A DNA stretch of 64,000 nt from assembly GCF_006345805.1 (NCBI RefSeq), contig NC_043020.1, forward strand, positions 19,902,001 through 19,966,000. Reading direction: 5' to 3'. The stretch's first letter is position 1; each line of letters starts with the position of its first letter. The notes under the pieces were generated by a model. That model was not told the origin of the DNA. It made no database searches and saw only the letters and a program-made list of their open reading frames with translations. Shown piece after piece: positions 6,375 to 48,173 of the stretch. Source of the stretch: Octopus sinensis. Taxonomy: Eukaryota. A program made the position numbers and the translations under genes.

Positions 6375-7562
6375 TTATCCAAATTGCTATATCTATTAAC
6401 AGTGCTTCCCAGGTAGACAAACTGATCAACTACATCAAGTCGTTTACCATACACATAAATATTTGGTACACTATACTGCTTACCAGGGGCGGGTTGGTAC
6501 ATGACAATTGTTTTCTTGAGACTGACTGTCAATCCTAAGGCAGTGCAAGCATCAGAGAATGCATTCAAAATGTATTGCGCTACTAGATCACAATCATCTG
6601 CATACAAAAGGTATCTTATGATAGAGGTAATACCATTGTTTTTGCAGCAAGGCGCCTGATAATAAATATGCTGCCAGATGTTCGATAATGGATGTAAACA
6701 CCATATCTGCAGTTTCTGAAAGCAATACAGAAATCCATCGCAAAGTATATGGCAAATAGGGTCGGTGCCAGAATATCCCCCTGTTTCACTCCATTTTGTA
6801 TTGAAATGGGCTCCGACATTTTCCCTCTAACATTAACCCTACCCTTCATGTCTTCATGAAAAGACCTAACCAAAGCAAGGAACTTTTCAGGACACCCAAG
6901 TTTCTGGATGTCTTTCCACAATGCTTTTCTATTAACAGTATCAAAGGCTTTTGTCAGATCAACAAAAACCTGATACAAATCCAGAGCCCGTTCCACACAC
7001 TTCTCTTGAAGCTGTCTAGCTGAAAAGATCATATCAGCAGTGCCACGTCCCACACTTGACTTTCTGGAAGAACACAATCTGCAACGTGTTTCAGCAGATG
7101 ATCCAGAAGTACTCTGCATAAAACCTTTCCTATGACAGAAAGCAATGATATTCCCCTATAGTTACCACAATCATTCCTGTTGCCCTTTCCCTTATACAAG
7201 ACCACCATTACTGTATCTCTCCAGTCCTCAGGTACAGATTCACTCGCCCATATCCTGACAAACAAGGAGTGAAGTTGCTGCAGAAGTTTCTCACCACCTT
7301 GTTGTAACAACTCTGCATAAATGCCATCCATACCCGGAGATTTCCCATTATTCAACCTTGAGACAGCCATTGCAACTTCTTCCAACTTTGGTGGTTCCGC
7401 GAGTGCTGCCTTCACAGGCAATCCAGGGATGAGATTGAGAACATCCTCACTAACTACAGACTGCTGATTCAAAAGTTCATCAAACTGTTCTTGCCACCTT
7501 CGCAGAATTCCTTGTGAATCACGAAGAAGTTCTTTACCATCCCTGCTTCGAATCCCTGGCAC
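6375..7562 (-). mobile_element. RTE-clade LINE, internal reverse-transcriptase fragment (frameshifted)
   Basis: KSPGMDGI.AE, NYRGISLLS, DMIFSARQLQEKC, VFVDLTKAFDTVNR, GVKQG..LAPTLF, YADD, FVYLGS. Confidence 0.92.
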
Positions 7563-9611: not shown

Positions 9612-9808
9612 GTTTTGGTACAAGGCCAGCAATTTTGTGGTAAGTAGACAACATCAACCACAGCGCTCAACTAGTATTTAATTTATCAACCTCGAAAGGG
9701 TGAAAAGCAAAGTCGACCGCGGCGGAATTTGAACTCCGAACATAAAGAGAGACGAAATGCCGCTAAGCATTTTTCCCAGTATGGTAACGATTCCAATAGC
9801 TCACCGCT
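9612..9808 (-). mobile_element. tRNA-derived SINE family B
   Basis: GAATCGTTA...AAATGCTTAGCGG...GAGTTCAAATTCCGCC...GTCGACTTTGC body shared with 16692, 22684 and 30042. Confidence 0.85.
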
Positions 9809-16691: not shown

Positions 16692-16942
16692 TAGGCGGTA
16701 GGCAGGCAGACTTGTTAGCACGCCTAGCAAAATGCTTAGCGGTATTTCGGCCATCGCTACGTTTTGAGTTCAAATTCCGCCGAGGTTGACTTTGTCTTTC
16801 GTCCTTTTGGGGTCGATAAATTAAATACCAGTGAAACAGTGGGGTCGAAGAAATCGACTTACCCCTCCCCCCAAATTGTTGCCCCTGTGGTAAAATTTAA
16901 GACCATTGTCTCTCCCTCCTAAAAAGCACTGGCCTTGTGCCC
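16692..16942 (+). mobile_element. SINE family B
   Basis: GGCAGACTTGTTAGCACGCC...GAGTTCAAATTCCGCCGAGG...GGGGTCGATAAATTAA. Degenerate copies also at 10365-10470, 19478-19700, 26935-27085, 44222-44420. Confidence 0.88.
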
Positions 16943-21302: not shown

Positions 21303-22311
21303 TTATTTGCCAATCAATGCAGCTACAGAGAACTTAAGCGGGATCTTCGCACGCTCAGTAGTAAAAGTTCTTTCTGTTTGAGATTCCATTTTAAACGAAT
21401 TAATTGCTCCTTCTGCGTAGCTATCGTTTATGTCTGCTGCTTTCGGCCGATTTAATGGTCTGACTAAACATTGAAAAGCTGATCTTCTTTTCAACAGCTC
21501 TTCCGTAGTTATAAGTTTTCTCATGTTACTGAGACCATTTTTACCGATAGTTGTAACCAATGCTAGCGGTGTCTGGCATGTAGGGGATACACTCTCACCA
21601 GGAGACATTCTACTTGTACCACTGTGCTCAACGTTTTTTCCTGGTACTCCGTCGTTGACTTTGGAAGAAATTTCTGTAGATGTGTGAACACAGCCACTGT
21701 AGCTTTTACCACTTTTGCGTTGCTCTAATCCGTCTGGATCTTTCTGGTTTGTGGATGTGTACAAATTCAAGGACAACAGTTGGTAATTAACTTTTTGTTG
21801 CGCACTTTGGAATTGTAGTTTGTCTTTAGTGACAGAAGGGGAAATAGTTGATGGCAACGAAGGTGATGAAGATGAAAGAGACAAAGTATCTTCCGGACAC
21901 TTTGATGTCAACGAGGGGGAAGTGGATGGAATTCTACCTGAAGGCACACTAGTGATGGACGAAAGGATCGGGGATGGTGGCGACAACGATGAATTAAAAT
22001 ATATCGGGTGGTCTGAATTGAAAGGTGATGTGTGAAACGGGTAATGGACGGAGTAGGTTTGGATTAGTTGATTTAGGGTGGCAGGACAATATCCAGCAGA
22101 GTTCATAAAATTGGCACTGTTAGAAGCAACCACCAGACTTGACTTGGTACCTGTGGCTAGGTGTTCAATCGCTCGCTCTAAGCTACCGCCACAACCTTGC
22201 CACACCAGTTCTAAGAGGTTCGGATTTAAGGCCGGGAAAATTCTTCCTAAGAATTCTTTTGGGGTTTGGAGTTGCTGCTGCTGAATTTGCTGCTGCTGTT
22301 GCTGTTGATGT

Positions 22312-22371
<60 letters not shown>

Positions 22372-22648
22372 GATTGATGTTGTGGTCCAGGTCGACGTTC
22401 TCCTGTATAATTTTGCAGATTGTTATTGACCGTAGGTAAACGTAAAGTGCCGACTGCAGAAAGTGCATCTGCACCTATGTTAGATTTCGATTTGGCAACA
22501 ATTTCAGCTTCTTGTTCTCTCTGGTACATCACTACTTCAAGTTCTTTGTCAGCAAAACATCTCCGCTTGCGCATTCTTTCGTTCATGTAAGGCAGGACTC
22601 CTCGAATACTCTCGGGAGAAGGTAGACATTGCAGTCGGGAGCGGTAAC
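21303..22648 (-). CDS. DMRT2: DMRT2-class gene, terminal coding exon 3 (RMRKRR-F-DKELE motif, poly-Q, DMA-like domain, eh1-like C-terminus)
   Basis: Acceptor tatttattttttag|GT TAC gives (S)YRSRLQCLPSPESIRGVLPY in frame with ORF 21303..22586. ERMRKRRCFADKELE matches the DMRT2 conserved block (DRMRKRRAFADKELE). DMA-like TPKEFLGRIFPALNPNLLELVWQGCGGSLERAIEHLAT at 22265-22152. Stop TAA at 21305-21303. Confidence 0.93.
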
Positions 22649-22683: not shown

Positions 22684-22880
22684 AATCCTTTCTACTATAG
22701 GTACAAGGCCTGAAATCTTGGTGGGAGGGCTAGTCGATTACACTGGTACTTAATTTATCGACCCCGAAAGAATGAAAGACAAAGCTGACCTCGGCGGAAC
22801 TCGAACTCAGAACATAGCGGCAGGCGAAAAACCGCTACGCATTTCGTCGAGCGTGCTAACGATTCTGCCCGCTCGCCGCC

Positions 22881-22882
<2 letters not shown>
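22684..22882 (-). mobile_element. SINE family B in Dmrt2 intron 2, flanked by (AAT)n
   Basis: Reverse-complement family B copy ending about 35 nt before the exon-3 acceptor. Confidence 0.88.
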
Positions 22883-22953
<71 letters not shown>

Positions 22954-25757: not shown

Positions 25758-25894
25758 TGGAAAGTATTTCTCTAGATAGTGTATGTTGTTGCAAATTCCG
25801 CAGATTTCGGTGGAGTAATTTCCTTTGTTGCAGGACGTTAGCTGCATTCTTTCCCTTGTTCTTCATATTGCTGTTCGCCTCGGTTGCTTGATGC
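25758..25894 (-). CDS. DMRT2: DMRT2-class gene, coding exon 2 (137 nt; not in the supplied ORF track)
   Basis: Acceptor ctttattctcttttataag|G, then (R)HQATEANSNMKNKGKNAANVLQQRKLLHRNLRNLQQHTLSREILS, donor A|GTAAGC. Phase 2 in and phase 1 out match exons 1 and 3. QATE after the DM domain is the DMRT2-type continuation. Confidence 0.92.
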
Positions 25895-25982
25895 CTTATA
25901 AAAGAGAATAAAGTTATATATTAGTGTTACATACCTCTTCCTTATTCTTTCCCTCTCTCTTCCTTCTCTTTATATCTCCGTG

Positions 25983-26041
<59 letters not shown>

Positions 26042-27778: not shown

Positions 27779-29417
27779 TGATTACATGCCATAACCAAGA
27801 ACATACGACTGGACTACATAAAATATATAACTGCGCAAAATTTCTTTTAGAGTGACCTTCTTTATGACTTATGGACAACTAACAGAAGAGATTCAGAGAT
27901 GCTCAATATAGAAAACACTTGGTGGCGCTCAAATGATTTGAACTTACACTCCGAAGTCTTTACCGAGGACTAAGTCTGCGGGGTAAAGAGTTACTGTAAG
28001 ATCATCTCCAGATGATGCAAATAAGCAAAATAAACAAATAAACACAATACAAGGGGGGGGAGGCAGGTTGCTCTTTCAAAGTATATAATAACTGTCCAGT
28101 AGGAACCCGGTGCGAGACTGAAGGGGTCATATATGAGGCTACGGTGATACCTAGACCTAATACCCGTAATAACAGTAATGTGACATCGAAAAGCAGATTA
28201 ACCACGTCTCAGTTGCCACGCCCAGAGATAATAACCAAACCGGGACCAGCATCGCAGAGAGAGCGTCACCGAAGATCTCGATACCACCGCCACCGATAAT
28301 GAACAAATCATAGATGCAGATAGAGAGACCAGTACAAACACCACACCTTGAAATAATGACCTGTCCAGAGCCAGCGACTTGGAGGAGGTATCTGTCATTC
28401 CCGGTTCCACCGATGAGATGACTATCCCCGCCCCATATGTTACCAGGAGGTAACATGTTTATAAATATTTATAAATATCTTTATAAATATATTGGTTCGA
28501 CGAGTACTTCGTTCAAGAAACGTTTTCTTAACCACCAGTCATCCTTCAGAGTCCCAGAAAGATGGTTTGTCTGGCAACTTTTAAAAATTGAGGTATTTCT
28601 GAATCGCTATGCTCAGCCTTTATAACCACAATAACAGCATGCTTCTTCATTTCTTGAGTAAGCTGAAGATCTGCCAATATTTTCTGAATAAAAAAAAAAT
28701 GTAGCAATGACTCACAAAGGTCTGTCCTCAAATGCCTTACGCAACCTGTATATGTAAATAGAGAGAAAACAAAGTCATTGTTTTCTCTCTATTTACATGT
28801 AAACATGTATATATATTTTATATATCTAGCCCAAGCGGTTTGTTTATTTATTTGCATCATTATCTCCCCCCTCTCTCTCTCTCTCTCATATATATACACA
28901 CAAACACACACACATACATACATAATACACTCACACGCATATATACCACTGTGATTAAGAATCACACTTCACAGCCATGAAAGTCCGAGTTCGATCCCAT
29001 TTTGCGTCCTGGATGCTTGTTTTTTTTTTACTACTTTCCTTTTGATCTTTCGTTATAAAGGATTACAAGAAAGATTACGATGCTGTGATAATGATGTCCC
29101 GCCATGACAATGATGTCATTTATACATGGAGACTTTGCCGTGCTATGCTCAGTTGAGTAAGAATTACTTAACTGAAATAGCCAATTTGATAAAAACCGGG
29201 GATAAATAACGGGGATAACTAACAAAAATAAATATAGAATAGGAAAACAGAAGAATGACAAACATTTGTTATCAATATGGAAAGAAAACATAGAAGACAA
29301 AAAATATTAGAAATTAAATGCATTATCTCAACAACATTCAGCTTACGTAGTTGACATTCAATAATACAAAACGCTACACGAACACACAAACTATTTAGTT
29401 ATCATATTTTACCAGCA

Positions 29418-29544
29418 CAAAGAAGCTAACGAACCACAATGGTAATAAGGAGTGCCACTTGAGCCGCCATTACTCTCTGTCGTTCTACAACCAACAAGCA
29501 GTTGGCACATTGACAGTTGCGCCAACTACAATATCATTTATGAC
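29418..29544 (-). pseudogene. Diverged partial duplicate of the Dmrt2 DM-domain exon 3' half plus a piece of intron 1
   Basis: 29450-29544 aligns without gaps to 30393-30487 (85/95 identical) and reads [30 protein letters not shown]. 29418-29448 matches intron-1 sequence 30284-30314. The original donor region is deleted in the copy. Confidence 0.9.
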
Positions 29545-30041
29545 TAGAAATACGGATCCCAATTAGAGAATTGTCAATGAGGCCTCTACAAAAGCTGACG
29601 ATTGATATCTTATGCTTTGTGTAGTACGCCAATCCCCACCAAAAAGCATTGAGGGTTTGATGCTTCACCATCAGCCACAATGATATACAAAAAAATCCAT
29701 CATCGTGTACGGCGGGGAAAAGGGCTTCTCTTAGCGGACAGCCCAATTTGAACAATTTGAACAAATCTATCTAATTGGCTTAAAACCTTGTGACTGCTCG
29801 AGATCGCTCTCTGTGGTGTAGTACTGTGTACTCTCGAATACAATTCTGAGAATCAGATATGACCAGAGAAGCTAAAGAAAGGAGACCTGCATGGAAAGAG
29901 CAAGAGTCCCTCCGGGTTATGACCCTGCTATTACGTTCTCCCACGGTAACGCAGATTTCATGACACCGATAGAAACGCTGATAATCTGGATGTCTTCAGA
30001 GTGATAACCTGTGAGTCTTCAGAGACATGAAGGACGAACCT

Positions 30042-30250
30042 AATAATCCTTTCTACTGTAACCATACTGCAGACCTTATATTCTGGGGGAGCAGCTTGTC
30101 GATTATATCGACCCCAGTGCTCAACTGGTACTTAATTTATCAACCCCGAAAGGATGAAAGGCAAAGTCGACCCTGGCGGCGTTTGAACTCAAAACGCGAA
30201 GACGTACGAAATGCCGCTAGGCGTGCTAACGATTCTGCCAGTTCGCCACT
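30042..30250 (-). mobile_element. SINE family B in Dmrt2 intron 1 with 10-bp target-site duplication
   Basis: AAGGACGAAC at 30030-30039 and 30253-30262. Confidence 0.9.
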
Positions 30251-30387
30251 TTAAGGACGAACTTGATAATAATTTGGCTAACTCAAAGAAACCAACGAAC
30301 CACAATGGCAATAACAATGATAACAGCAAACTCATTCTACAAATAATTGGAATATGCAAAAGAAAAACATAAGAAACATGTTTTTAC

Positions 30388-31019
30388 CTTCTGAGAGCTA
30401 CTTGAGCCGCCATTACCCTCTGTCGTTCCACAACCAACAGACAGTTGGCACATTGACAGTCGCGCCATCTACAATATCGTTTGTGACCCTTTAAACATGA
30501 CACAACACCGTGATTTCGGCAACGGGCACATTTTGGTGTCCGCAGTAAACGACGCACCGAGGCAACAGATTGTTGTCTGAAAGTTGGAGTCGACTTCAAA
30601 TGACTTCCATCGATGTGGTGGGCTTCAGTCCTTATAATTGTTGATTTCAGCGGTCCCGGAAGTTTGTTTTGGTTCAAGGATAACGACAACGTCGACGATG
30701 TTGTAGTTAATGTTGTTTTTGGAGATGATGATGTGGCGGTTGATGAGAATACTGCAGACGATGATGATGACGATGATGATGAGGAGGAGGGTGAGGAGGT
30801 GGAGGGTGAGGAGGTGGAGGGTGAGGAGGAAGAGGATAATGATGACAACGTCGACGATGACGATGATGAGGACGACGATGATGCTGAACGCGGAGAAAAA
30901 GACATTAAAGCTGACGGCAGGTGTTTGGCGTTTCTGTACGTGTAAATCGCACTGTCAAGCAGTCTGTTGCTATAGTGACCATTCCTTATAGAGTTATCTG
31001 GTCTACACTCCACCTCCAT
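30388..31019 (-). CDS. DMRT2: DMRT2/Dmrt11E-class transcription factor, coding exon 1 (Ser/Thr-rich N-terminus + DM zinc-binding domain)
   Basis: ATG at 31019 ([10 protein letters not shown]...). DM domain [51 protein letters not shown] at 30542-30388; VVSCLKGHK and [14 protein letters not shown] are the DMRT2/11E-type residues. Phase-2 donor AG|GTAAAA at 30388/30387. The upstream part of the supplied ORF (MCCCC...) is a (TTG)n repeat and polypyrimidine tract. Confidence 0.94.
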
Positions 31020-31032
31020 ATTGGTTCGTTCA

Positions 31033-31080
31033 CTGGAAATAAAGAAAGAAGCAAAAGAATAAAATGAAGGAGAGAAATTT
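31033..31080 (-). promoter_or_regulatory. Strong 3' splice acceptor 13 nt upstream of the Dmrt2 ATG (implies an upstream 5' exon)
   Basis: tttctccttcattttattcttttgcttctttctttatttccag|TGAACGAACCAATATG on the minus strand. Confidence 0.65.
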
Positions 31081-31172
31081 AAGTAACAACAACAACAACA
31101 ATAACAACAACAACAACAACAACAACACATTGTCTAAAGAGTTTCGAAACCGAAGTTAAGCTGTGTAGTGTA

Positions 31173-31990
31173 CGAAGAGGTACTGAAAAGTTCTTGGCTT
31201 CGAGTAAAAGAAAATATGGTGGTGGGGAGTCAGTTAATTATGATTTTATTTAACATATTCCCCTCTCAGATTCACACACTTATTGCAACGCTCCTTCAGT
31301 TTTTCTAAGCCCTGTAAAAGAACTCAGAAGGTTGGGTCTCCATTCAAGAATCTGTAACAGCGATTACTTCCGAATCGGAGTGAAATTCCGTTATTTTGAG
31401 ATGTTTCTTCAGTTGTGGAAAGAGGTGATAGTCAGAGCGGGTCGAGTCAGGAGAGTAAGGTACGTAGTCAACAAATTCGAAGCCAAAGTCGCGTATTTAC
31501 CGTGGAGTTTCATGTGTTGTGTGTGCTGGTGCAATGTCCTGCAAAAACACGACACTACAGCTCAGCTTTCCACGGCGTTTCTACTTTGAAGCTTCACGCA
31601 ATTCGGCCAACAAAGACATGTAGTATTCTGCGTTGATGACGCGACCCTTTCGCAGGAACTTTATGAGAAGTACTCCGTCTTTGTACCAGAACACTGAAGC
31701 CACAATCTGTGACTTCTGGGTCCGAAACTTCTTGGGATGCGGTGAACCGCTGTGACACTACTCCGCTGATTGCTCCTTGGTCTGGGGATCATAATGACCA
31801 AGTCAAGTTTCATCCATCGTGACTAAACGAGCCATAAAAAAAAATAAAATTAGCCCTTCCGTCCAAAATCACCTTTGATGTCGTACTTTGATGCGCTTCT
31901 GATCTGCATTCAGGCATTTTGGCACCCATTTTGCGGAAACTTTCTCGTGTCCGGAATGCTGTGGATGATGTGGCTACCGTATTTGATGGC
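31173..31990 (-). mobile_element. Degenerate mariner transposon just upstream of the Dmrt2 DM exon
   Basis: Terminus TA-CGAAGAGGTACTGAAAAGTTC; QTKEQSAE*CHSGSPHPKKFRTQKSQIVASVFW. Confidence 0.8.
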
Positions 31991-33615: not shown

Positions 33616-34060
33616 AGATGGATCAGCTCACTTTGGTATACGTCGTCAGGTGTTGAAGCTCCAACGTAAATCAACAGACAATATCAAAGAGACCCTTTCT
33701 ACTGCATTCTGTCTGTTCCTAGGGACCCTGCAAACGGCACAGACCACCTGCATGCAAACAGGTGAGACCTAATTGAGGAATCTTATAAACAACCGTTCCG
33801 GACATTATCTTTCCGACTATTACGAATTTGTAGAACTACGTTATCTAATGGGCCAGTTCCCTTCTTTTTCTATTTGGTTCTAAAGACGCTAAGGTGAGAT
33901 TTGATGGAGATTTGACTGCTATTTCTAACACATCGGGATTAAGTGATGCGAGATATGAAGAGAGGGAGAGAGAGACAGAGACAGAAATAGTTTTCAACTA
34001 ACAATAACCACGCCTCGGATAACCCTCATTGGCTACGGCACCGCCTCTGCGCAAAGCTGA
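33616..34060 (-). promoter_or_regulatory. Candidate Dmrt2 promoter / non-coding first exon
   Basis: Consensus donor CATCT|GTAAGT at 33616/33615; CCAAT box (34032-34028) and GAGGCGG GC-box-like motif (34047-34041) downstream of a long GA/TC tract. Motif evidence only. Confidence 0.25.
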
Positions 34061-36482: not shown

Positions 36483-36520
36483 CAGAGAGATATATATACA
36501 TACAGAAACATGTATATATA

Positions 36521-36610
<90 letters not shown>
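34990..36610. repeat. Two-copy tandem duplication, unit about 819 bp (unique core + (TA)n-rich part)
   Basis: CAGCGGGAAGGTGAGATG... at 35237 and 36056; the unique cores differ essentially by 1-bp indels. Confidence 0.9.
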
Positions 36611-36614
<4 letters not shown>

Positions 36615-36774
36615 GTATACATACATACATATATACATACGACTGAATCCTGATATTTTTATTCAGCAATTTCGTTCTTAAATTCTTGAATTATCAGATC
36701 TCCTGCTGTCAAAGATTTGCTTTTTGTTTTTACATTATTATATTCATGACGTATACACACACATACACACACGT

Positions 36775-42185: not shown

Positions 42186-42335
42186 GCGGTTCCCTATTAC
42201 ATGGTTCTGGGCTCACTCCCACTGAATGGGCTATTGGGCAAGTGTCTTCTACTATAGTTCTGGACCGAGCAAACTCTTAAAAGTGGATTTGATAGACGGA
42301 AACCGAAAGAAAACTAGTTGTATGTATATATGTAT

Positions 42336-42426
<91 letters not shown>

Positions 42427-42486
42427 TATATATGTATATATGGTGTGTGTTTGTGTGTGTATATAGTTGTGTGTATATATGTAATG

Positions 42487-47743: not shown

Positions 47744-48088
47744 GGGGCGTTGTATTATGTCTGTGTATCTTACACTCTGTATGTTTATATATGTCTACGC
47801 GTGAATGTATATAGTAGTTGCGCTGATTTTATTTACGAAATGTTGTAAATTGTTTAAAATAGTATTTTTCAGGGAGCGAATTTGGGTTCCACCATATTTT
47901 GACAGCTGCAACAGCAGCAACAAAAACAACAACAGCTACAACATCGTGAACAACAACAATAACAACAGCAACAGCAACAACAACATCGTCAACAGCAACA
48001 GCACACAAATAAGAATGACGGCAGCAACTGCAACAAAATAACTGAAACAACTAAAAGAAAAGATAAAAATATGTGTGTGCGTGTGTGG

Positions 48089-48173
<85 letters not shown>

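What the first reader, a model, noticed from the sequence alone, without database searches (positions are those of the whole stretch)
29413..29543. Duplicated DM-domain half-exon in Dmrt2 intron 1 looks like a ready-made poison/alternative exon
Seen: a 95-bp copy of the DM exon 3' half lies about 850 bp into intron 1 in the same orientation. It also carries a piece of intron 1, so it arose by DNA-level duplication rather than as a retrocopy. Its 5' edge is a candidate weak acceptor (CTAAT branch point at -20, gtatttctAG at 29545-29544). A GTAAAA donor identical to the exon-1 donor hexamer sits at 29412. Splicing exon 1 (phase 2, AG) onto it reads AG+T CAT AAA TGA = Ser-His-Lys-stop, a protein ending right after the intact DM domain or an NMD target. 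Known: regulated splicing at weak acceptors producing truncated or sex-specific products is central to insect dsx/tra. Inference: this could be an undescribed splice switch on a cephalopod Dmrt gene, or simply a dead duplicate.
Basis: partly seen in the sequence, partly recalled or inferred. Interest (0 to 1): 0.75.

Follow-up and report, generated by a model that had tools for sequence, protein, structure and literature searches.

The report
Decayed half-exon copy in Dmrt2 intron
A 139-base, decayed copy of the end of the DNA-binding exon of an octopus Dmrt2 gene sits in that gene's first intron; it is real, but it looks like an ordinary dead duplicate, and whether it is ever spliced could not be tested here.

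Summary
On the minus strand, 29544-29450 copies the last part of Dmrt2 exon 1 (30487-30393) at 85/95 identity. The next block, 29448-29406, copies intron 1 (30314-30272) at 81%. It is therefore a DNA-level duplicate, not a retrocopy. The AG at 29545-29544, the GT at 29412-29411 and the Ser-His-Lys-stop reading are all as described.

The "ready-made poison exon" reading gains no support. The 78 nt missing from the copy include the native exon-1 donor. The GTAAAA at 29412 aligns to non-donor intron sequence, and that hexamer occurs 3 times in the intron against 2.2 expected. The acceptor ranks 68th of 325 intronic AGs. A better AG lies 42 nt upstream. Ninety other pseudo-exons in intron 1 have both sites at least as good. 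The copy covers only DM-domain positions 19-47 and carries a CpG nonsense change.

Expression and conservation could not be tested. The only other octopod sequence the collections returned was one O. bimaculoides protein. All three cephalopod Dmrt2 products seen use the canonical exon 1 to exon 2 junction.

Best explanation: a decayed local partial duplication. This is a new member of a known kind and of low interest.

The parts
30388..31130 (-). Dmrt2 exon 1, coding part at its maximum extent. In-frame ATGs at 31130, 31019 and 30905; the true start is unknown. It encodes the whole DM domain. Donor AAG|GTAAAA, with GT at 30387-30386 and two bases carried over.
   Evidence: junction VALRR|HQATE shared with P0001-P0003
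30393..30487 (-). Parental exon segment: 95 nt from the 3' part of exon 1 (GHKRYC...AQVAL). This is the source of the copy.
30315..30392 (-). 78 nt of the parent with no counterpart in the copy: the last 5 nt of exon 1, the native donor and 73 nt of intron.
30272..30314 (-). Parental intron-1 segment that is also duplicated.
30040..30252 (-). SINE inserted between parent and copy, flanked by the direct repeat GTTCGTCCTT (30262-30253 and 30039-30030). Without it the copy would lie about 640 nt from exon 1.
   Evidence: four family copies in the window
29450..29544 (-). Exon-derived part of the copy, 85/95 identical to the parent. It covers DM profile positions 19-47 only. The 10 differences are 7 synonymous and 3 non-synonymous, including CGA>TGA.
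29406..29448 (-). Intron-derived part of the copy, 81% identical to 30272-30314.
29413..29543 (-). It lies between AG 29545-29544 and GT 29412-29411. The in-frame TGA is at 29536-29534, 121 nt before the candidate donor.
25758..25894 (-). Dmrt2 exon 2, 137 nt. Acceptor ttttataAG|G, donor CCA|GTAAGC.
21303..22648 (-). Dmrt2 exon 3, ending at the stop codon. It contains the DMA motif and a poly-Gln tract.

Best explanation
The feature is a decayed partial duplicate, a pseudo-exon relic.

Inferred origin: a local DNA-level event copied about 216 nt spanning the exon 1/intron 1 boundary of Dmrt2 (30487-30272) into intron 1, a few hundred bases downstream and in the same orientation.

Shown: the copy never contained the first 18 positions of the DM domain or a native acceptor. 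It lacks the 78 nt that hold the native donor, either through a later deletion or a template jump during the event. It has drifted to about 10-19% divergence, including a CpG nonsense change. A SINE later inserted between parent and copy.

Inferred: the AG and GT that frame a 131-nt 'exon' are chance dinucleotides of the quality that AT-rich introns supply in large numbers. The copy is most likely spliced out with the rest of intron 1 and has no function. If it is occasionally included, the result would be low-level noise removed by nonsense-mediated decay.
For: - Homology is confined to 95 + 43 nt and does not extend on either side, with or without the SINE.
- The native donor is absent from the copy, and the candidate donor aligns to non-donor intron sequence.
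- Acceptor rank is 68/325 and donor rank 20/300. Ninety equal-or-better pseudo-exons exist in the same intron. GTAAAA occurs at the chance rate. The PWM-free pyrimidine measure gives the same acceptor rank.
- The copy covers only DM positions 19-47. It has an in-frame TGA, and a second stop at 29428 would end the frame even without it.
- Exon-part divergence (10.5%) and intron-part divergence (10-19%) fit a neutral copy next to a constrained parent.
- All cephalopod Dmrt2 products retrieved use the canonical VALRR|HQATE junction.
- None of the three predicted truncated ...VALRSHK products, one per in-frame ATG, is in a 15-billion-protein collection.
- Unannotated intronic homologues of exons are common in animal genes (PMC9013439).
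Against: - There are no RNA data for this species, so rare or tissue-specific inclusion is not excluded.
- The splice-site matrices were human-derived values recalled from memory, not a cephalopod model. The real exon-3 acceptor also scores poorly (-1.6), so the ranking is coarse.
- The 7:3 excess of synonymous changes is somewhat more than a neutral copy predicts (P 0.03-0.09).
- The acceptor happens to keep the parental reading frame. That is a 1-in-3 coincidence.
Confidence: 0.8

Rival explanations
1. Regulated poison or alternative exon. The 131-nt segment is included under some conditions. That would give a nonsense-mediated-decay target or a truncated DM-only protein, and so tune Dmrt2 output.
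For: - AG, CTAAT at -20 and GT are present.
- The frame is kept, and the stop lies 121 nt upstream of the next junction, which meets the usual >50-55 nt rule.
- Sense orientation inside the pre-mRNA.
Against: - Signals are at background level: 90 equal-or-better decoys, with a stronger AG 42 nt upstream.
- The inherited donor is lost.
- Nearly any intronic pseudo-exon would introduce a stop, so the stop is not special.
- No truncated product is on record.
- Divergence fits neutral drift.
Confidence: 0.07
2. Relic of a once-used duplicated DM exon. An old tandem duplication of the exon-1 region gave a second coding copy that stayed under protein-level selection for a time. It was then disabled by truncation, the 78-nt deletion and the nonsense change.
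For: - Seven of 10 differences are synonymous, and 7 of the 8 non-CpG differences.
- At the three synonymous sites where both decapodiform transcripts agree, they carry the parental base. This suggests those changes occurred on the copy's lineage.
Against: - The skew is not significant under the proper null of a neutral copy and a constrained parent (P 0.03-0.09).
- The outgroups are too distant to polarise synonymous sites reliably.
- No trace of the 5' half of the exon exists upstream of the copy.
- No second DM sequence occurs elsewhere in the window.
Confidence: 0.09
3. Assembly artefact: a misplaced read or haplotype fragment.
For: No evidence in its favour was found. It is listed only because a single assembly was seen.
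Against: - The copy is 10-19% diverged from the parent, has unique flanks and carries an internal 78-nt gap.
- Collapsed or chimeric assemblies give near-identical copies.
Confidence: 0.02

Closest known systems
Unannotated intronic homologues of exons (tandem exon duplication relics; Ivanov & Pervouchine 2022, PMC9013439)
   Same: An exon-derived segment in the adjacent intron of the same gene, in the same orientation, arising at the DNA level and absent from the gene model.
   Different: This copy is only part of an exon plus a piece of intron. It has no inherited splice sites, and its frame is closed. Functional tandem duplicates are usually whole exons of matching length and phase.
Poison exons coupled to nonsense-mediated decay (SR-protein genes, Tra2b, SCN1A 20N; PMC11791180, PMC7790302 as listed)
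   Same: If included, the segment would place a stop more than 50 nt upstream of an exon junction.
   Different: Known poison exons are defined by observed inclusion and, typically, strong conservation. Neither could be shown here, and the splice signals are at background level.
Sex-specific splicing of insect doublesex/transformer
   Same: The gene family (DM domain), and the idea of a weak regulated acceptor.
   Different: dsx is a different DMRT subfamily. Its switch uses defined enhancer repeats bound by Tra/Tra2, and no such element was looked for or found here. From my own knowledge, no splicing-based control of Dmrt2 is known. The paper searches found no report for cephalopods.
Processed pseudogene / retrocopy
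   Same: A non-functional fragment of coding sequence.
   Different: The copy carries intron sequence and lies within the parent gene, so it is not reverse-transcribed mRNA.

Membership tests
DMRT2 (Dmrt11E-type) gene | Complete DM zinc-module DNA-binding domain | tested here: met
   Pfam PF00751, profile positions 1-47 of 47, E 4.6e-23
DMRT2 (Dmrt11E-type) gene | Closest relatives are DMRT2 orthologues | tested here: met
   93% identity to an O. bimaculoides protein. The next hits are named DMRT2/DMRT2-like in gastropods, brachiopod, amphioxus and fishes, though a few source names differ (A2-like, dmd-4-like). No phylogeny was built.
DMRT2 (Dmrt11E-type) gene | Conserved intron position just after the DM domain (…VALRR | HQATE…) | tested here: met
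   The same junction appears in P0001 and in two cephalopod transcripts, P0002 and P0003
Poison exon (alternative splicing coupled to nonsense-mediated decay) | Observed inclusion in transcripts | not testable with these tools
   No transcripts of this species were found in the collections. Exact look-up of the predicted truncated products found nothing.
Poison exon (alternative splicing coupled to nonsense-mediated decay) | Premature stop more than about 50-55 nt upstream of a downstream exon junction | tested here: met
   TGA at 29536-29534, 121 nt before the candidate donor. Almost any intronic pseudo-exon would also meet this.
Poison exon (alternative splicing coupled to nonsense-mediated decay) | Splice sites that stand out from intronic background | tested here: not met
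   Acceptor rank 68/325, donor rank 20/300, and 90 equal-or-better pseudo-exons in intron 1. The matrices were approximate.
Poison exon (alternative splicing coupled to nonsense-mediated decay) | Conservation across species above the neutral level | not testable with these tools
   No octopod genomic sequence of the locus could be retrieved.
Tandem exon duplication giving alternative or mutually exclusive exons | Sequence homology with a neighbouring exon of the same gene | tested here: met
   85/95 identity
Tandem exon duplication giving alternative or mutually exclusive exons | Whole exon copied with both splice sites and an open frame | tested here: not met
   Only the 3' part of the exon was copied. 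The native donor is missing, and the frame has stops at 29536 and 29428.
Retrocopy | Intron-less copy of the mRNA | tested here: not met
   The copy contains 43 nt of intron 1.

The most novel reading that the evidence does not exclude
The half-exon copy is a genuine regulated cassette. Its inclusion, perhaps specific to sex, tissue or stage, would switch Dmrt2 between a full-length factor and either a decay-targeted message or a DM-only truncated protein. That would be a splicing-level control of a DMRT gene outside insects, built from a duplicate of the gene's own exon.
Probability: 0.06. Interest if true: 0.6.

Novelty: new member of a known kind. Interest (0 to 1): 0.15.

Why it matters
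As it stands it matters little. It is one more exon-derived relic in an intron, of the sort that exon-homology scans find in many animal genes.

Two small practical points follow. It could mislead gene predictors, because a second DM-like tblastn hit lies inside the gene. And it marks a dated local duplication that can serve as a presence/absence character among octopods.

If junction reads showed regulated inclusion, it would be an example of a gene making its own off-switch from a duplicate of its exon, in a family central to sexual development. That would deserve attention.

Tried and rejected
- **More copies or longer homology.** The window holds no third copy. Nothing extends beyond the 95 + 43 nt blocks, with or without the SINE. 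The flanks of the copy are not repeated in the window apart from simple repeats.
- **Transcript evidence.** Exact look-up of full-length, truncated (...VALRSHK) and exon-1 read-through products from three start codons, plus the 76-aa intronic ORF: none is in the collection.
- **Other octopod sequences.** Two homology searches returned only one octopod protein, from O. bimaculoides, and it has no contig on record. One metagenome scan with a 26-nt pattern covering both parent and copy found nothing. Conservation therefore could not be tested.
- **Polarising the differences.** Two cephalopod (probably decapodiform) transcripts were used as outgroups. They are too distant for firm conclusions.
- **Selection on the copy.** The synonymous excess is not significant under the appropriate null.
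- **Splicing origin of the 78-nt gap.** Rejected, because its ends are not GT...AG.
- **dsRNA or antisense roles.** Rejected, because parent and copy are direct repeats and no inverted copy exists nearby.
- **RNA genes at the site.** No tRNA and no Rfam family there.
- **Literature.** No report of Dmrt2 splicing in cephalopods.

Full report
**1. What the locus is**

On the minus strand the window carries a three-exon gene.
- Exon 1 has an open frame reaching back at most to 31130 and ends at 30388 with the donor AAG|GTAAAA. Two bases (AG) carry over to the next exon. It encodes ...[51 protein letters not shown](R).
- Exon 2 is 25894-25758.
- Exon 3 is 22648-21303.

The joined product is open throughout and has a complete Pfam DM domain and a DMA motif. 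Its best match is O. bimaculoides XP_014784056.1 at 93% identity. The next matches are proteins named DMRT2 or DMRT2-like from gastropods, a brachiopod, amphioxus and fishes. The O. bimaculoides model and two Logan transcript contigs from other cephalopods (46-49% identical) all join ...VALRR to HQATE.... That is the canonical exon 1/exon 2 junction.

**2. The observation**

- The repeat finder and blastn show 29450-29544 matching 30393-30487 at 85/95, ungapped and in the same orientation. The E-value is 6e-30 against the whole window.
- One base further on, 29406-29448 matches intron 30272-30314 at 81%, with a 31-nt core at 90%.
- The 78 nt of the parent between these two blocks (30392-30315) have no counterpart in the copy.
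- No further homology exists on either side, whether or not the intervening SINE is removed. There is no third copy in the window.
- The AG at 29545-29544, the CTAAT with its A at -20, the GT at 29412-29411 and the reading AG+T CAT AAA TGA (Ser-His-Lys-stop, TGA at 29536-29534) are all present.

**3. Anatomy that bears on the interpretation**

(a) *The native donor is gone.* The missing 78 nt are the last 5 nt of exon 1, the native donor and 73 nt of intron. The one splice signal the copy could have inherited is exactly what it lacks.

(b) *The candidate donor is not inherited.* Its GT aligns with 'CC' in the parental intron (copy GCTGGTAAAAT, parent GTTAGCCAAAT). GTAAAA occurs three times in the sense strand of intron 1 against 2.2 expected from base composition. 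The identity with the exon-1 donor hexamer is therefore coincidence.

(c) *The candidate acceptor is not inherited.* It sits at the 5' breakpoint of the homology. Pyrimidines make up 0.59 of positions -20 to -4, against 0.82 and 0.65 for the two real acceptors, and a T follows the AG.

(d) *The copy is a partial, closed domain fragment.* It covers only DM profile positions 19-47. It has CGA>TGA at a CpG, and a second in-frame stop at 29428 would close the frame even without the first.

(e) *A SINE separates parent and copy.* It has three other copies in the window and lies at 30252-30040, flanked by the direct repeat GTTCGTCCTT. The original spacing was therefore about 640 nt rather than 844.

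**4. Are the splice signals more than chance?**

I scored every AG and GT on the sense strand of intron 1 (4,493 nt) with simple position matrices. The values are human-derived and recalled from memory, so the ranking is coarse.
- The candidate acceptor ranks 68th of 325 AGs. The candidate donor ranks 20th of 300 GTs.
- Ninety AG...GT pairs spanning 40-300 nt have both sites at least as good as the candidate.
- A matrix-free count of pyrimidines gives the same acceptor rank, with 69 of 325 as good or better.
- A better acceptor lies 42 nt upstream at 29585. Paired with the same donor it reads in frame into the same TGA.

The premature stop lies 121 nt before the candidate donor, so it meets the usual distance rule for nonsense-mediated decay. 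Almost any intronic pseudo-exon would meet it too. None of this separates the candidate from ordinary intron background.

**5. Divergence**

Of the 10 exon-part differences, 8 are transitions. Seven are synonymous and three are not (R>stop, R>S, D>N), and two of the non-synonymous changes are at CpG sites. The appropriate null is a neutral copy beside a parent that accepts only synonymous change. Under it, 7 or more synonymous changes out of 10 has P = 0.03-0.09, depending on transition bias. That is suggestive, not significant.

At the three synonymous sites where both distant outgroup transcripts agree, they carry the parental base. The outgroups are too far removed to rely on this.

Total divergence is 10.5% in the exon part and 10-19% in the intron part. 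This fits neutral drift of the copy.

A mariner relic upstream of exon 1 is shared with the O. bimaculoides gene model and is about 82% identical at the protein level. This hints that neutral divergence between the two species is of the same order as the parent-copy divergence. The copy may therefore predate their split. That is a testable inference, not a result.

**6. Expression and conservation**

Neither could be tested.
- Two protein searches found no octopod sequence for this gene other than the O. bimaculoides protein. That protein has no contig on record.
- Exact look-ups of the full-length, truncated and exon-1 read-through products found nothing.
- A metagenome scan found nothing.
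- The paper searches turned up Dmrt1 expression work in O. sinensis and a sex-chromosome study. They found nothing on Dmrt2 splicing in cephalopods.

**7. Explanation**

The best-supported reading is a decayed partial duplicate. A local event copied the exon 1/intron 1 boundary region into the intron. The copy lost, or never received, the native donor, and it has since drifted. I put this at about 0.8.

The rivals are:
- a regulated poison or alternative exon (about 0.07);
- a relic of a once-used second DM exon (about 0.09), which rests only on the synonymous excess;
- an assembly artefact (about 0.02).

One speculative point cuts against the 'ready-made' idea. Immediately after the duplication, the copy would have carried a strong native donor inside the intron. 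The loss of exactly that segment is what selection against mis-splicing would favour.

**8. Comparison with known things**

Intronic, unannotated homologues of exons are common. In human genes about 2% of exonic nucleotides have a homologue at 80% identity or more within the parent gene (PMC9013439). The present case belongs to that kind, but it is a fragment rather than a whole exon.

It fails two defining features of functional tandem-duplicated exons: a whole exon with its splice sites, and an open frame. It meets only the trivial feature of a poison exon, namely stop position. It is not a retrocopy. The analogy with insect dsx/tra is a lead from memory, not something tested here.

**9. Verdict**

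The feature is a new member of a known kind and of low interest.

Noticed in passing
window 31584-31929 (-): A mariner-type transposase relic (Pfam PF01359, with in-frame stops) lies just upstream of Dmrt2 exon 1. The O. bimaculoides RefSeq model XP_014784056.1 splices the orthologous relic onto the DM exon as its N-terminus. That is probably an annotation artefact, and it shows the insertion predates the split of the two species.
   Followed up: partly
window 30040-30252 (-); also about 22690-22890, 9650-9770, 16760-16860: A SINE family of about 210 nt has at least four copies in the window. The intron-1 copy has a 10-nt target-site duplication, GTTCGTCCTT. ARAGORN calls no tRNA in any copy.
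   Followed up: partly
window 33977-34058 (-): An Rfam U4 spliceosomal RNA match (69.6 bits, E 2e-13) is only 82 nt long although it spans model positions 1-138. It is likely a truncated U4 pseudogene about 3 kb upstream of Dmrt2.
   Followed up: no
window 29450-29544 vs 30393-30487: Seven of the 10 parent-copy differences are synonymous, as are 7 of the 8 non-CpG differences. This is a borderline excess (P 0.03-0.09) that a purely neutral copy does not quite predict.
   Followed up: yes
window 21303-22648 (-), exon 3: This Dmrt2 carries a DMA motif (PF03474), as do the other invertebrate DMRT2-like hits. The fish DMRT2a hits list only the DM domain. Exon 3 also has a Gln-rich tract of about 40 residues that the O. 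bimaculoides model lacks (a 42-residue alignment gap). Exon 1 has a long poly-Ser region.
   Followed up: no
window 29534-29764 (-): A 76-codon ORF in the intron runs in frame into the copy and ends at the same TGA. It is not in the protein collection and is most likely a chance ORF.
   Followed up: yes
window 6616-7562 (-): Reverse-transcriptase fragments (PF00078, E 3e-12) from a decayed non-LTR retroelement.
   Followed up: partly
P0121 (Trichomalopsis sarcophagae protein, not in the window): A 174-aa wasp protein consists of an 87-residue block containing a DM domain, repeated twice almost exactly. This is either another DM-exon tandem duplication or an assembly or annotation artefact.
   Followed up: no
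window 25981-26041 and many other sites (for example 36500-36620, 42320-42440, 48080-48170): Very abundant (TA)n and other dinucleotide microsatellites, one of them about 90 nt upstream of the exon-2 acceptor.
   Followed up: no
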